Shown piece after piece: positions 7,256 to 36,053 of a stretch of DNA of 64,000 nucleotides (its first letter is position 1; every line of letters starts with the position of its first letter). The stretch lies in the IMG/VR virus record IMGVR_UViG_3300046516_001816, positions 62,001 to 126,000 of that record. One strand, given 5' to 3'. The notes beneath the pieces are model-generated. The model made no database searches, was not told the DNA's origin, and was given only the letters and a program-made list of their open reading frames with translations. The position numbers and the translations under genes are program-made.

Positions 7256-7329
7256 CTATCTGACACTAATACGAGAGTGTAGTGTTCGCGCGATCATTAA
7301 CTCTGTTTAAAACTGAAGGAAACGAAATC

Positions 7330-9297
7330 ATGGGCATCAACTCCCCGGAAAACAATCAAGCACAAACGTCGATGGGTCAGGCACTCGGGCGCGCCCAGGA
7401 ACAGGCCGCCGGTTCGAATGCTGGCACGACCCAGCAACAGACGTTTAACCAGCCGCGTGGTCAAGCGGGTCAGGCTCGTCCGCGTCTGGCAGACTTCGGC
7501 CGTGTTTCGCGTGCGGCGTTCAGCCGTAACCCGCAGAGCGACGTCATCACGAAGCTCAGCAACGCGCTCACCGAAATCTACAAGAACGGCGCGCAGATCG
7601 ACAAGTCGTTCGACGTGACGCTGATCCCGATCGACTACAACAACACGCGTACGCTGGTGAAGTCGTGTATCGTCGTCGCGGTTCGCGATCTGCAAAACCC
7701 GGACAACGGCGTCGCGTACCACACGCTCGTGCTGGAAGGCTCGAGCGAGCCGATCCAGAACGACTTCCAGATGATCGGTAACACGAACATCGAAATCACG
7801 AAGGTGACGGGCGACGTGTGGACGCCGGTGTTCCAGGGCGAAGTGCAGGAATGGGTGCAACGCGCATTCCCGGGCAAGAACCTGCTGCCGGTCGACGCAG
7901 AAGTCGTGTACAGCAACTTCGACGTCGAAAACCACAACCGCGTGCATCAGCTCGCGATGAACGCACTGGCCGCTTGCGCGACCGAGCTCGACATCCGTGC
8001 GGGTGGCGTGGACATCGACCTGGGTGCAGTGGACCAGGACAACACGCTGACCGTGCAAATGTCGTTCAACAACGCGCAGACGGAAGACGTCGCAGGCATG
8101 CCGCTGCGTTCGGACATCGTGATCGACTTCCGCGCAGGCGGCCAGCCGATCCCGAATCAGCCGGGCTCCAACACCCGTGTGTCGACGCTGTCGCGCATCT
8201 CGGGCTTCATGGATCTGGTCTGGATGCCGGCGCAGCCGCAGCAGCAAGCGTTCAATCCGTGGGTCGCGCAACAGCAAGTCGCGCCGTCGCCGGACGAGTT
8301 CAAGCGCTACATCCCGCGTTTCGTGATGACCGATCTCGAATCGCAAACGCTGCTCACCACGCGTGCTGAACTCCTGGCACTCGTGACGGCGTTCACGCTG
8401 CGTGAAAACAACGCGTGGGTCGAGTCGTTCCGTCCGTCGCCGGTGCAGGTCGAAGGCGTGGACTGGAAGGACATCGGCGCCGTGGGTATCGAGGCGAACT
8501 TCGATCGCAACCCCAACGGCTTCGGCTCGCGGATCGACACGAAGAGCGACCAGTTCCAACGCGGTCAGAACTCGGCAGCCGACTACCTGATGCGTCTCGT
8601 CGCATCGGTGTTCCAGCCGAAGCTGATGCTGTCGCTCGACATCCCCGAGTGCGGTCCGCAAACGTGGTTCACGTCGGTGTTCGCCGCAGCTGGCGAAACG
8701 CAGAACGCGAACAGCGCGCATGCGACGGAGTTCATCATCAAGGAAGCGGACAAGCTCACGCATGGTCGTTTCCTGAAGCACTTCCCGGCAAACGCGCGCG
8801 TCACGGTCGATGAAAACAACCGCATCTTCAAGGGCTACTGGATCGACCGCAACGGTCACATGCGCAGCCTCGACGAGATCGATTACCTGGCCGTGCTCAA
8901 CATGGTCGGCGATCGCGATCCGGAACTGGCACGCGAATGGTCGGACAGCTTCGCGCTCACGGGCGTGCCGCTCGAGATCCGTCTGGACAAGCGCCGTAAG
9001 ATCATCAACGGCATCCTTGGCCAGAACAACGTGCACATCAAGGGCTTCGCACGCCGTGTCACCTTCGAGCCGGCATTCGTCGACGCGTTGGTCGCAGCAT
9101 GCAAGGAAGTGGGCCTCACGATGCGCACGATCGCACCGTACGCAGAGCTGAACACGTACGAGCGTGGCGTGAATCCGTACGCCGCACAAGCAGCGCTGGA
9201 CGCATCGGGCTACACGTCCGGTCTGTTCAACCGCGGCTTCGCGGGCTCCAACCAGGGCCAGTTCGGCAACCGCGCAGGCTTCTCGCGCTGGGGTTAA
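7330..9297 (+). CDS. chmA: Chimallin, major phage-nucleus shell protein (phiKZ gp54/PhuN-like)
   Basis: 655 aa with disordered Q/G-rich N-terminus and aromatic/Gly C-tail (FGNRAGFSRWG); extreme high-expression codon bias; immediately upstream of nvRNAP beta-prime-N as in all chimalliviruses; ATG at 7330 after SD GAAGGA. Confidence 0.85.
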   Translation: MGINSPENNQAQTSMGQALGRAQEQAAGSNAGTTQQQTFNQPRGQAGQARPRLADFGRVSRAAFSRNPQSDVITKLSNALTEIYKNGAQIDKSFDVTLIPIDYNNTRTLVKSCIVVAVRDLQNPDNGVAYHTLVLEGSSEPIQNDFQMIGNTNIEITKVTGDVWTPVFQGEVQEWVQRAFPGKNLLPVDAEVVYSNFDVENHNRVHQLAMNALAACATELDIRAGGVDIDLGAVDQDNTLTVQMSFNNAQTEDVAGMPLRSDIVIDFRAGGQPIPNQPGSNTRVSTLSRISGFMDLVWMPAQPQQQAFNPWVAQQQVAPSPDEFKRYIPRFVMTDLESQTLLTTRAELLALVTAFTLRENNAWVESFRPSPVQVEGVDWKDIGAVGIEANFDRNPNGFGSRIDTKSDQFQRGQNSAADYLMRLVASVFQPKLMLSLDIPECGPQTWFTSVFAAAGETQNANSAHATEFIIKEADKLTHGRFLKHFPANARVTVDENNRIFKGYWIDRNGHMRSLDEIDYLAVLNMVGDRDPELAREWSDSFALTGVPLEIRLDKRRKIINGILGQNNVHIKGFARRVTFEPAFVDALVAACKEVGLTMRTIAPYAELNTYERGVNPYAAQAALDASGYTSGLFNRGFAGSNQGQFGNRAGFSRWG

Positions 9298-33447: not shown

Positions 33448-33497
33448 GGCATAAGGGGAGGGCGCGAGCCCTCCCTCTATGACGTTACTTCTTTTTT
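33448..33497. terminator. Bidirectional terminator between convergent genes
   Basis: GGCATA-AGGGGAGGGC-GCGA-GCCCTCCCTC-TATGAC, T tract. Confidence 0.75.
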
Positions 33498-33949
33498 TGG
33501 TTCTTTTCCGGGGACAAACAGATATGAACCGGAATCGGGAGCGGATCCAGATGCTGCATGATCAAGGGATAGACGTATTCCCAACGCAGCCCGCCTTCGC
33601 CACAACCGATCATGGGCATCGCCAAGGAGGTGATACCCAGTTCTTCGTAGCGCTGCGCCAGCCGCGTGAGTCCGCTTTCAATCAATTCCAGTGGAGAGGG
33701 ACGTCGCCAGTGATACTTGGTGGCAAAGAGCAACGTGTACTGACCATTGCCCACGCCCACCATGGAGAGACCTTGATAGTCAAACACGTGGTTCTTACAG
33801 GCAATCTGATACGCCTGATCCAACCCCGGGTAACGGAGCTTAAAGGCTTTCGCCAGTCCTTTCCCCATCGTGCCCACCATATTCACCGGACACACCAGCG
33901 TCTGCGCTGGCGCCGTAAAGATGTCCCGCACCTCCACTGTCTTGATCAT
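33485..33949 (-). CDS. Macrodomain (ADP-ribose processing, DarG-N-like) protein
   Basis: DIFTAPAQTLVCPVNMVGTMGKGLAKAFK, FATKYHWR, SLAMPMIGCGEGGL macrodomain signatures. Confidence 0.88.
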   Translation of the reverse strand: MIKTVEVRDIFTAPAQTLVCPVNMVGTMGKGLAKAFKLRYPGLDQAYQIACKNHVFDYQGLSMVGVGNGQYTLLFATKYHWRRPSPLELIESGLTRLAQRYEELGITSLAMPMIGCGEGGLRWEYVYPLIMQHLDPLPIPVHICLSPEKNQKKK

Positions 33950-34320
33950 TGATCCTCTCCATTCATGCGTTCCACTTCTGCCTGTATGTCGGCCGCTACC
34001 CGAGACGTCTTGGCCTGTTCCTTGGCTGAGAATTCCAGCAGGTAGGTCAGGATGTCCGTGGGCAGCTCCAGGAACTCCACCAGATTCAGTCCCCAGTACT
34101 TCTTGACTTCGCGCTCATGATACTGCCTGATGCGCTCGTATTGCAGCCCGCCCGAACCAATGTCCTCGGCCTCTCGCATGGCGACCAGAGAGAGCGCATC
34201 TGCCTCAGTCTCGTGCGAGTGGTCGTGGATGCCAAAGGTCGTTTCATACACGTCACGCAGCGCGATTTGCAAGTCCGATGAATTTATGATGGGAGAAGCT
34301 AAGTCCATCACGCGTTTCAA
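33946..34320 (-). CDS. Small conserved protein; candidate frameshift-extension (T/E-prime-like) segment
   Basis: No clear SD; YWGLNLVEFLELP motif; frame open back to the slippery site in the upstream gene. Confidence 0.65.
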   Translation of the reverse strand: MKRVMDLASPIINSSDLQIALRDVYETTFGIHDHSHETEADALSLVAMREAEDIGSGGLQYERIRQYHEREVKKYWGLNLVEFLELPTDILTYLLEFSAKEQAKTSRVAADIQAEVERMNGEDQ

Positions 34321-34376
34321 CGGATTGTCGTCCGCAATATGCGCGCCGAAGTCCGGCCGCGCGACGTGTACTAACG

Positions 34377-36053
34377 TTACAGCCTCTGGCTGATTCGGAT
34401 CGCCTTCTGCTCGAGCAGGGTAAAAAAAGTGTGCTCGACATTCAGCGGCAGCAAGTGCGGGAATTTCGGGAAGCTGTTCTCTTCCTCCTGCACTGCCGCA
34501 GGCGTCGCGATCAGCGCGATCGTCTTGTCGTCGATGAACTTCTGCACCTCATTGAAGAAGGTGCTGCGCAGATCATCGTCACCCGACAGTTCGTTGAGCG
34601 TGCTCTCGATGGTTTCCCGATCGACGATTTCAGCGCGGCCCGCATGGATGGTTTCCACGTAGTGCGTGTACTGACGCATGGACGTAGCCTTGCCTTGCTG
34701 GACAATGAAGTCCGCCCGACGACCATCACCCGGCTCCAGAGCAAACGCTTCGTCCACCGTCTTGGTGATTTCACCAATCCAGTCGTAGCCCGCCTTCACG
34801 TACTCGTCGCCCGAAGGCGCGCGCAGCGTCACCGCGATGTCCTTGGTCAATTGCACCTTACGGGGCTGACCGCGCAGGAAGTCATCCCGATAGCGCTTGA
34901 CCATATCGACCGACATCGAACCGCTCGAGCGATTGCCCATGTGGCTGATCTGACGCGCCGTGAGTGACTTGGTGTCCACCCACAGCAGCTTGCCGACCGA
35001 GAGCTTCTGCTTCAACAGCTTTTGCTCTTTGGTCTTCGGATCCAGATACGGACGCGCGTACTGGAAACCACGCGGCCAGATCGCGCAGGCCAGACCCCAG
35101 AACAGAATCGGCAAGTCCGCCGCCTGAATCATGGAGCGCACCACCACCGGGTCCTTCACTTGCAGCGACGTGTCGTACACATACTGCATGACGAAGTCGA
35201 GAATCCAACCCGTCATGAACGACGACGTATTGGCAAACGCCAAGCCGTTCGTGGTCCGACCGATGACGATCTTCTCGTCCATCATGCGGTTGTTCAGGTT
35301 GATCTGCGCGGTGTCACCCGGCGCCTTGATCGTGACATGAAAACCCGAATGCCACAGCGGCACTTGAATGACGCTACCCAGACCCGCCAAGGCCCGGACT
35401 TGGAGCACCGCCTTCTCGCCCGCGACCTTGCCTTCGCCGACGTTCTTGAAGTTCAATGCCCCCATGTTGATCTTGCCGCGCTCGGACTCGATCGTTTGCA
35501 GCCAGAGCGAACCTTCGCGGTCCACCGTGTCTCGCCACTGATCTTTGTTCGGCGCGATATTGATCGCTTCACGTTGGTAGTCGACCCACTCGCGACCCGA
35601 CTCCGTGCCGGTCAGATCGAGATTGGGCAAGGCTTCCAGCGCTTTTTGCGTACGCTCTTGCGTGTCGGCTTGACCGACCAGGAACACGCCTGCGTCATTC
35701 CACTCGCCTTCGAGCGGGAAGAACACTTCGTGATCCTGACGCACGGTTGTCGACGGCGGCAAGAAGCCGACGCCGGTACCTTCTTCCTCGTCCTCGTCCT
35801 TCTTCTCTTCGTCTGCCGGTGCGGCGACCGGCGCGCTCGGTGCTTGTTCTTCGAGAGCTTCCGCCGGGATCTCATCGAACCCGGCGTCGCTCGGCGTACC
35901 GCTCACGTCCAGCACCAGATCGGTCGTGAGACCGTTGGCGGCTGCCCCGGTTTGCGGTGCGGTTTCTGCGCCGACGGACGTGTTGGTGGCGATCGCGCCC
36001 ACCAGGGCGCTGCTACCATGCGGGTCCATCGGCAGTTCGTTATGTTGAGACAT
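34377..36053 (-). CDS. Conserved chimallivirus protein, candidate tail/baseplate assembly chaperone
   Basis: 558 aa with acidic disordered N-terminus; function inferred from the frameshift architecture. Confidence 0.6.
   Translation of the reverse strand: MSQHNELPMDPHGSSALVGAIATNTSVGAETAPQTGAAANGLTTDLVLDVSGTPSDAGFDEIPAEALEEQAPSAPVAAPADEEKKDEDEEEGTGVGFLPPSTTVRQDHEVFFPLEGEWNDAGVFLVGQADTQERTQKALEALPNLDLTGTESGREWVDYQREAINIAPNKDQWRDTVDREGSLWLQTIESERGKINMGALNFKNVGEGKVAGEKAVLQVRALAGLGSVIQVPLWHSGFHVTIKAPGDTAQINLNNRMMDEKIVIGRTTNGLAFANTSSFMTGWILDFVMQYVYDTSLQVKDPVVVRSMIQAADLPILFWGLACAIWPRGFQYARPYLDPKTKEQKLLKQKLSVGKLLWVDTKSLTARQISHMGNRSSGSMSVDMVKRYRDDFLRGQPRKVQLTKDIAVTLRAPSGDEYVKAGYDWIGEITKTVDEAFALEPGDGRRADFIVQQGKATSMRQYTHYVETIHAGRAEIVDRETIESTLNELSGDDDLRSTFFNEVQKFIDDKTIALIATPAAVQEEENSFPKFPHLLPLNVEHTFFTLLEQKAIRISQRL
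34422..34428 (-). other. Candidate -1 programmed ribosomal frameshift site T TTT TTT
   Basis: In-frame ACT TTT TTT ACC; the -1 frame is stop-free for 34 codons and continues into ORF 33946-34320. Confidence 0.55.

What the first reader, a model, noticed from the sequence alone, without database searches (positions are those of the whole stretch)
33946..36053. Candidate programmed -1 frameshift giving a G/GT-type tail-assembly-chaperone pair in a chimallivirus
Seen: 14 codons before its stop the 558-aa ORF reads ACT TTT TTT ACC, a T TTT TTT heptamer (34428-34422, minus strand). Slipping -1 gives YPARAEGDPNQPEAVTLVHVARPDFGAHIADDNP with no stop and runs in frame into ORF 33946-34320, predicting a 702-aa fusion. 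That ORF has no clear SD. A small hairpin (CTGC-TCGA-GCAG) starts 4 nt after the heptamer. Established: lambda G/GT and P2 E/E-prime tail chaperones are made by -1 frameshifts, and P2 uses a T-run site. The downstream YWGLNLVEFLELPTDIL segment recalls the Wxxx(E)xxxL/M motif of such extensions. Inference: an unannotated recoding event in a conserved jumbo-phage gene pair. Caveat: these genes are not between tube and tape-measure genes as in canonical loci.
Basis: partly seen in the sequence, partly recalled or inferred. Interest (0 to 1): 0.82.

Follow-up and report, generated by a model that had tools for sequence, protein, structure and literature searches.

The report
Conserved −1 frameshift in jumbo-phage gene
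A run of seven T's near the end of a conserved jumbo-phage gene (the phiKZ gp77 family) very probably makes some ribosomes slip back one base and add a 158-residue tail, and the same signal is kept in 34 of 35 related phage loci checked, phiKZ included, where it is not annotated.

Summary
ORF1 (34377-36053, minus strand, 558 aa) reads ACT TTT TTT ACC fourteen codons before its stop. The -1 frame is open from that T7 run (34428-34422) into ORF2 (33946-34320), predicting a 702-aa fusion.

In this window alone this is no more than chance would give. Comparison makes the case. In 34 of 35 related loci (20-86% protein identity, phiKZ, PhiPA3, 201phi2-1, Goslar and a Bacillus phage included), ORF2 lies in the -1 frame, that frame is open from a T5-T8 run at the same Phe-Phe site, and the first Phe codon is always TTT.

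A conserved H-V-x-x-P-D-F-G motif lies between the ORF1 stop and the first possible ORF2 start. That spacer evolves like coding sequence.

Eleven independent assemblies carry the identical T7, so it is not a sequencing error.

The tail-chaperone (G/GT) family label is not supported. ORF1 has no chaperone-family match but shows weak, repeated similarity to the T4 gp26/gp51 baseplate-hub assembly chaperones. The proposed hairpin is not conserved or significant.

I found no paper or annotation describing this recoding. It is a new variant of a known kind.

The parts
34377..36053 (-). ORF1, 558 aa. Member of the phiKZ gp77 / 201phi2-1 gp136 / PhiPA3 gp074 family (phrog_4585). Residues 1-92 are predicted disordered; residues 93-558 form a confident mixed alpha/beta fold.
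34422..34428 (-). Slippery heptamer T_TTT_TTT (zero frame ACT TTT TTT ACC), covering the conserved Phe543-Phe544.
34321..34422 (-). -1-frame linker of 34 codons. The first 14 overlap the ORF1 tail; the rest fill the apparent intergenic spacer. It contains no ATG, GTG or TTG.
34345..34368 (-). Conserved H-V-x-x-P-D-F-G motif in the -1 frame. It lies after the ORF1 stop and before any start codon.
33946..34320 (-). ORF2 body (phrog_12109), a helical C-terminal domain of the predicted fusion. Its stop overlaps the start of the macro-domain gene (ATGA).
34407..34418 (-). Small hairpin CTGC-TCGA-GCAG, 3 nt after the heptamer. It is present but not supported as a stimulator.

Best explanation
ORF1 and ORF2 form one recoded gene.

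Most ribosomes read ORF1 to its stop and make the 558-aa protein. A minority slip back one base on U_UUU_UUU while tRNA-Phe occupies the P and A sites; both tRNAs re-pair perfectly with UUU. Those ribosomes then read YPAR..., cross the ORF1 stop in the -1 frame and finish at 33946. The result is a 702-aa protein in which the last 14-residue helix of ORF1 is replaced by a 158-residue extension.

The site sets a fixed ratio of short to long form, as in lambda G/GT and P2 E/E+E'. The protein is probably a non-virion assembly factor distantly related to the T4 gp26/gp51 baseplate-hub assembly chaperones.

Shown:
- the signal is conserved;
- the linker is under coding constraint;
- many lineages have no start codon upstream of conserved extension sequence.

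Inferred:
- that the slip is ribosomal rather than transcriptional;
- its efficiency;
- the assembly role.
For: 1. In 28 loci analysed together, ORF2 is in the -1 frame, that frame is open from the T-run, the run-to-stop extension is 154-177 aa, and the first Phe codon is TTT in every one. This holds although TTC is preferred elsewhere (window: 3 TTT, 17 TTC; GC3 up to 0.82). Seven further loci at 20-25% identity, phiKZ among them (its near-identical relative fMGyn-Pae01 is already in the 28), show the same. That makes 35 of 36 loci counting the window, or 34 of 35 relatives.
2. Rough products over 18 deep lineages are 10^-11 for TTT, 10^-28 for the stop-free span and 10^-8.6 for phase.
3. The first possible start in the -1 ORF lies after the conserved H-V-x-x-P-x-F-G motif in the window and many others. 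It is 85 codons downstream in phiKZ and 88 in Bacillus phage AgentSmith, both about 36% GC.
4. In the spacer, pairwise differences are 0.22, 0.24 and 0.53 at -1-frame codon positions 1, 2 and 3. Y1, P2, H19, P23, F25 and G26 of the extension are invariant.
5. Eleven independent assemblies share ACTTTTTTTACCCTNCTCG.
6. An hmmsearch with the extension profile finds 1075 clusters. The top 150 are all 97-191 aa, and their N-termini scatter over profile positions 1-58, as expected when there is no real start.
7. No promoter-like or terminator-like site lies between the ORFs, and no SD-like tetramer precedes the candidate starts.
8. P2 E/E+E' uses T_TTT_TTG seven codons before the E stop, read directly from the genome.
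9. For function: BFVD fold hits to T4-like baseplate-hub assembly proteins (E about 3e-3, target-normalised TM 0.5-0.56); PF12322 in 3 of 39 members; phrog_150 'baseplate hub' in 3 of 38; 45 of 100 ESM Atlas feature hits are PF12322 clusters. gp77 is not named in the phiKZ virion atlas, and gp80-gp82 are not named in the Goslar virion paper.
Against: - There is no direct evidence: no junction peptide, reporter assay or ribosome profiling.
- No conserved downstream RNA structure or upstream SD-like stimulator was found.
- U_UUU_UUU is a weaker shifter than A_AAA_AAG in E. coli (PMC5009743), so efficiency may be low.
- Four lineages have G or A before the run, and one has only T5.
- Some lineages do have an in-frame start upstream of the motif (RP12, Psa21, 201phi2-1), so ORF2 could also be made separately there.
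- The link to T4 gp26/gp51 is weak. Profile-profile comparison gave only 37 columns at 19% probability, and PDB fold search gave nothing.
- Churi proteomics lists the gp077 homologue among early-detected proteins (PMC11849849), which fits poorly with a late tail-assembly role.
Confidence: 0.7

Rival explanations
1. Transcriptional slippage. The phage's (or host's) RNA polymerase adds one extra U on the A7 template run, so a fraction of mRNAs carry ORF1 and ORF2 in one frame and are translated normally into the same fusion.
For: The signal is a pure homopolymer of T5-T8 whose length varies between lineages. No RNA stimulator was found. Xanthomonas phage RTH11 has T7 where its sister LucasX has T8, which puts even the normal ORF1 tail out of frame; if real, that is easier to tolerate under polymerase slippage. 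These phages transcribe with unusual split multisubunit polymerases, which the window also encodes.
Against: Runs of 5-7 are short for efficient polymerase slippage, from my own knowledge of bacterial cases, which use about 9. In every lineage at least one Phe codon is preceded by T in the zero frame, as tRNA re-pairing requires. P2 uses the same heptamer class, and the record annotates it as a translational shift. Sequence alone cannot separate the two mechanisms.
Confidence: 0.17
2. There are two ordinary genes. ORF2 is translated independently from a weak or non-canonical start, and the -1 phase and open overlap are incidental.
For: Every database annotates two genes. TTG, GTG and ATG exist at 34320-34308. 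Some relatives have ATG or GTG starts upstream of the conserved motif. About a third of the window's genes also lack an SD-like tetramer.
Against: Conserved coding sequence lies upstream of every possible start in the window and in many relatives, by 50-88 codons in SNUABM54, SNUABM37, phiKZ and AgentSmith. Phase, open frame and the TTT wobble are conserved in 34 of 35 relatives. Called N-termini scatter over 58 profile positions.
Confidence: 0.08
3. The window shows an assembly or sequencing error in a homopolymer, or a recently broken gene.
For: The window is a metagenome-assembled viral contig, and a T8 run would fuse the two ORFs.
Against: Eleven independent assemblies have the identical T7. 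Cultured phages sequenced by many laboratories have the same two-frame layout. No in-frame fusion appears among 56 ORF1 relatives or the top 150 ORF2 relatives.
Confidence: 0.02

Closest known systems
Bacteriophage P2 E / E+E' tail-gene frameshift
   Same: A -1 shift on T_TTT_TTN a few codons before the stop of the upstream ORF (P2: GGT TTT TTG, seven codons before the stop). It gives a C-terminally extended second product in a contractile-tailed phage. Erwinia phage pEa_SNUABM_54 has exactly T_TTT_TTG at the homologous site.
   Different: P2 E is 91 aa and sits between the tube and tape-measure genes. Here ORF1 is 558 aa, belongs to another family, and lies among RNA polymerase, helicase and head genes. 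No sequence similarity was found.
Lambda G / GT tail assembly chaperones
   Same: The logic is a short and a long form sharing an N-terminal part, with their ratio fixed by a low-level -1 shift near the end of the first ORF. Neither lambda product is in the virion (PMC5009743). gp77 is likewise not named in the phiKZ virion atlas.
   Different: No Pfam tail-chaperone match. The heptamer differs (lambda uses G_GGA_AAG, from my own knowledge). Size and genomic position differ. Binding to a tape-measure or tube protein is untested.
T4 gp26 / gp51 baseplate-hub assembly chaperones (Pfam PF12322)
   Same: There is weak but repeated fold, profile and language-model similarity of ORF1 to this family. 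T4 gp51 is needed for assembly but is absent from the particle, and both proteins are listed as hub-assembly chaperones (PMC3004832). T4 gene 26 also yields two products, 26 and 26'.
   Different: T4 makes its second product by internal initiation, not frameshifting. The T4 proteins are 208-249 aa. Profile-profile comparison is not significant. The ORF2 domain has no detectable counterpart in gp51.

Membership tests
Programmed -1 ribosomal frameshift site (X_XXY_YYZ type) | A slippery heptamer in the correct zero-frame phase that allows P-site and A-site tRNA re-pairing. | tested here: met
   T_TTT_TTT in phase. T_TTT_TTN occurs in most relatives, and every lineage has at least one Phe codon preceded by T.
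Programmed -1 ribosomal frameshift site (X_XXY_YYZ type) | The -1 frame is open and under coding constraint from the site onward, and this is conserved in relatives. | tested here: met
   34 of 35 relatives; codon-position differences 0.22/0.24/0.53 in the spacer; invariant motif.
Programmed -1 ribosomal frameshift site (X_XXY_YYZ type) | A downstream stimulatory RNA structure or an upstream SD-like element. | tested here: not met
   z = -0.24; consensus structure -1.25 kcal/mol with no covariation. This feature is not obligatory for phage sites.
Programmed -1 ribosomal frameshift site (X_XXY_YYZ type) | The trans-frame protein is actually made. | not testable with these tools
   This needs mass spectrometry, a reporter assay or ribosome profiling.
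Lambda G/GT - P2 E/E' tail assembly chaperone families | Sequence or profile membership in a tail-assembly-chaperone family. | tested here: not met
   No Pfam family for ORF1, ORF2 or the 158-aa extension. A Foldseek hit to a tail assembly chaperone has only E = 1.2.
Lambda G/GT - P2 E/E' tail assembly chaperone families | Position between the tail tube and tape-measure genes. | tested here: not met
   The neighbours are a macro-domain gene, a gp78-like gene and RNA polymerase, helicase and head genes.
Lambda G/GT - P2 E/E' tail assembly chaperone families | Two products sharing an N-terminus through a -1 shift near the 3' end; products absent from the virion. | tested here: inconclusive
   The layout is met. 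Virion absence is inferred only from gp77 not being named in the phiKZ atlas, and gp80-gp82 not being named in the Goslar virion paper.
Lambda G/GT - P2 E/E' tail assembly chaperone families | Binding of the tape-measure and tube proteins. | not testable with these tools
   This needs experiment.
T4 gp26/gp51 hub-assembly chaperones (PF12322) | A significant profile match to PF12322. | tested here: inconclusive
   3 of 39 members, best E = 0.0067, none above the curated cut-off. phrog_150 in 3 of 38 members at 1.2e-4. hhalign probability 19% over 37 columns.
T4 gp26/gp51 hub-assembly chaperones (PF12322) | A shared fold. | tested here: inconclusive
   BFVD hits at E 3e-3 to 3e-2 with target-normalised TM 0.5-0.56. 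An ESM Atlas structure row has TM 0.51, and 45 of 100 feature hits are PF12322 clusters. No solved structure exists to compare with.
Chimalliviridae | The genome encodes chimallin. | tested here: met
   PF25677 at 7282-9297(+), E = 3e-43.

The most novel reading that the evidence does not exclude
The two isoforms may not be tail chaperones at all. The gene would then encode an early-acting, non-virion factor of nucleus-forming phages, whose short-to-long ratio is set by slippage. That slippage could be by the phage's own unusual RNA polymerase rather than the ribosome. The module would be self-sufficient enough to have been captured intact in a bacterial island beside conflict-system genes.
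Probability: 0.15. Interest if true: 0.8.

Novelty: new variant of a known kind. Interest (0 to 1): 0.66.

Why it matters
- Every phiKZ-like jumbo phage checked appears to encode an unannotated protein of about 690-700 aa. This includes the model phages phiKZ, PhiPA3, 201phi2-1 and Goslar.
- More than a thousand database clusters of 'small hypothetical proteins' then look like mis-called C-terminal extensions.
- It extends the rule of ratio-setting frameshifts in tail or assembly genes to a phage group where none had been found.
- It ties that frameshift to the poorly understood T4 gp26/gp51-like hub-assembly family.
- It gives a sharp, cheap test: look for one junction peptide in existing phiKZ proteomics data.

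Tried and rejected
1. The hairpin as a stimulator: not significant and not conserved.
2. Solved structures by sequence and by fold: nothing for either piece.
3. Natural in-frame ORF1-ORF2 fusions: none among 56 ORF1 relatives or the top 150 ORF2-profile hits. The 686-687-aa BFVD relatives are probably longer at the N-terminus, judging from the offset of the phrog_8054 match; I did not inspect those proteins directly.
4. The idea that the short form resembles gp26 and the long form gp51, with ORF2 matching the gp51 C-terminus: a tempting local similarity (FLxLPxDI versus LLxNPDEIF) is not significant, with hhalign probability below 1%.
5. Single-sequence hhalign of the ORF1 profile against T4 gp51 and gp26: nothing.
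6. The AlphaFold model of the extension is poor (pLDDT 63.5). Only its last ~70 residues are a confident helical unit, and fold search returns only orthologues.
7. Literature searches linking phiKZ, gp77, Chimalliviridae or jumbo phages with frameshift, slippery or transcriptional slippage found nothing relevant. Several 'gp77' hits refer to other phages' numbering.
8. The P2 frameshift paper (PMC135442) is not held, so I read the P2 site from the genome instead.
Full report
**Observation.**
The window carries chimallin (7282-9297, PF25677, E = 3e-43) and split RNA polymerase genes, so it is a chimallivirus. It is IMG/VR contig UViG_3300046516_001816, 284,983 bp.

ORF1 (34377-36053, minus strand, 558 aa) ends ...VEHTFFTLLEQKAIRISQRL*. 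The codons ACT TTT TTT ACC give a T7 run at 34428-34422. The -1 frame reads YPARAEGDPNQPEAVTLVHVARPDFGAHIADDNP and joins ORF2 (33946-34320), whose first possible starts are TTG 34320, GTG 34311 and ATG 34308. None of these has an SD-like tetramer upstream, whereas 26 of 40 long ORFs in the window do.

Taken alone this is unremarkable. T7 runs occur 5 times in the window against 5.8 expected. A 34-codon stop-free -1 stretch has a probability near 0.4 in this GC-rich gene.

**Comparative test.**
ORF1 belongs to the phiKZ gp77 / 201phi2-1 gp136 / PhiPA3 gp074 family (phrog_4585). ORF2 belongs to phrog_12109. I collected three sets of relatives:
- 18 GenBank phages;
- 9 metagenomic or isolate-assembly relatives at 35-64% identity, plus three short contigs at 82-86%;
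- 6 very distant phages and phiKZ itself.

In 28 loci analysed together, ORF2 is in the -1 frame and that frame is open from a T-run at the homologous Phe-Phe site. The run-to-stop extension is 154-177 aa. The first Phe codon is TTT every time, although TTC dominates elsewhere (window: 3 TTT, 17 TTC). Goslar, Kwan, Phobos, Halocynthia phage JM-2012, two Vibrio phages and phiKZ behave the same at 20-25% identity.

Most run contexts are T_TTT_TTN (N = T, C, G or A). Four lineages have G or A before the run, and one has T6 shifted by one base. Every one keeps a Phe codon preceded by T.

Rough products over 18 deep lineages are 10^-11 for the TTT wobble, 10^-28 for the stop-free span and 10^-8.6 for phase. 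Lineages are not fully independent, but indels have changed the linker length repeatedly without breaking the frame.

**The linker is coding and has no start.**
An H-V-x-x-P-D-F-G motif (34368-34345) lies between the ORF1 stop and the first possible ORF2 start. Y1, P2, H19, P23, F25 and G26 of the extension are invariant in the window's clade. Recognisable versions occur across the family.

In the spacer, pairwise differences among 11 sequences are 0.22, 0.24 and 0.53 at -1-frame codon positions 1, 2 and 3.

The first ATG, GTG or TTG in the -1 ORF falls after the motif in the window and many others. It is 85 codons downstream of the run in phiKZ and 88 in Bacillus phage AgentSmith, both about 36% GC, where such open stretches do not arise by chance.

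A profile of the extension finds 1075 clusters in a 1.8-billion-protein library. The best 150 are all 97-191 aa, and their first residues fall anywhere between profile positions 1 and 58. That is the signature of gene callers choosing arbitrary starts.

**Not an error.**
Eleven independent assemblies share the invariant ACTTTTTTTACCCTNCTCG. No in-frame fusion exists among the relatives.

The single exception is Xanthomonas phage RTH11. It has T7 where its sister LucasX has T8, and its annotated ORF1 runs into the third frame. This is unexplained: it may be a homopolymer error or a real change.

**Mechanism.**
U_UUU_UUU lets tRNA-Phe re-pair perfectly in both ribosomal sites. P2 E/E+E' uses T_TTT_TTG seven codons before the E stop, which I read directly from the genome.

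No stimulatory structure is supported. No promoter-like or terminator-like site separates the ORFs.

Polymerase slippage on the A-run template would give the same protein and cannot be excluded from sequence. I rate it at about 0.17.

**Function.**
The ORF1 model is good (pLDDT 79.5; residues 93-558). The slip site sits in the first turn of the terminal helix. Nothing in the PDB matches by sequence or fold.

Four weak, independent signals point to the T4 gp26/gp51 family (PF12322):
- BFVD hits to 'baseplate hub assembly' proteins at E about 3e-3 and target-normalised TM 0.5-0.56;
- PF12322 in 3 of 39 members;
- phrog_150 'baseplate hub' in 3 of 38 members;
- 45 of 100 ESM Atlas feature neighbours.

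Both T4 gp26 and gp51 match PF12322 and are listed as hub-assembly chaperones. gp51 is absent from the particle (PMC3004832). Profile-profile comparison is not significant, so the relation is plausible, not shown.

gp77 is not named in the phiKZ virion atlas (PMC13250141), and gp80-gp82 are not named in the Goslar virion paper. Against a late tail role, Churi proteomics lists the gp077 homologue among early-detected proteins (PMC11849849).

The extension is helical and matches only orthologues. No tail-assembly-chaperone family matches either piece.

**Is it known?**
phiKZ RefSeq annotates PHIKZ077 and PHIKZ076.4 as separate genes with a 218-nt gap and no slippage. None of the 25 annotated phage records I inspected for this locus carries a joined CDS. 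Searches of the paper library found no description. The 2016 recoding review does not mention phiKZ or jumbo phages in the portion held, the first 300,000 of 449,034 characters.

**Verdict.**
This is a real, deeply conserved recoding signal. It is a new variant of the known phage 'short/long form by -1 shift' device, in a different protein family and phage group. Its function is probably assembly-related but remains open.

Noticed in passing
L035:8176-13136 (Paraburkholderia adhaesiva GCA_021390575.1, contig JAJEJQ010000004.1): An intact gp77-like ORF1 plus -1-frame ORF2, with the T7 site kept, sits in a 492-kb bacterial contig. Its neighbours are a Tn3 transposase, a DUF3701 integrase, CSD and H-NS-like genes, a GAAD/GASH/DO-GTPase/GAP1 conflict system and ParD. 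It could be a captured phage fragment or a chimeric contig.
   Followed up: partly
L009:2743-2755 (Xanthomonas phage RTH11): The run is T7 where the sister phage LucasX has T8 in the same phase. The annotated 627-aa ORF1 therefore runs into the third frame. This is either a homopolymer error or a real run-length change that would need slippage even for the normal product.
   Followed up: partly
window 33946-33949 and 33485-33949: The ORF2 stop overlaps the start of a macro-domain gene (ATGA). The macro gene follows the pair in the closest relatives (L021-L025) and in Goslar.
   Followed up: no
Protein-library hits P0067-P0216: The ORF2 family comprises 1075 clusters at 50% identity. The called proteins begin at scattered positions of the profile, so database entries for this family are systematically truncated.
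   Followed up: partly
L017, L012, L019, L038, L039, L041 (about 20-35 codons upstream of the FF site): A CxxC zinc-ribbon-like motif precedes the slip site in phiKZ, Psa21, 201phi2-1, JM-2012 and Vibrio phages. It is absent from the window's clade.
   Followed up: no
P0006, P0015 (L023, L025): Close relatives (about 58-63% identity) come from Caballeronia arationis and Paraburkholderia sp. BCC1886 isolate assemblies, on contigs of up to 74 kb and 286 kb. This suggests a Burkholderiaceae host and jumbo phages carried in cultures.
   Followed up: no
window 35778-36053 (ORF1 residues 1-92): The N-terminal ~92 residues are predicted disordered (pLDDT below 50) and include an acidic stretch (DEEKKDEDEEE). 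Their length varies widely between relatives.
   Followed up: no
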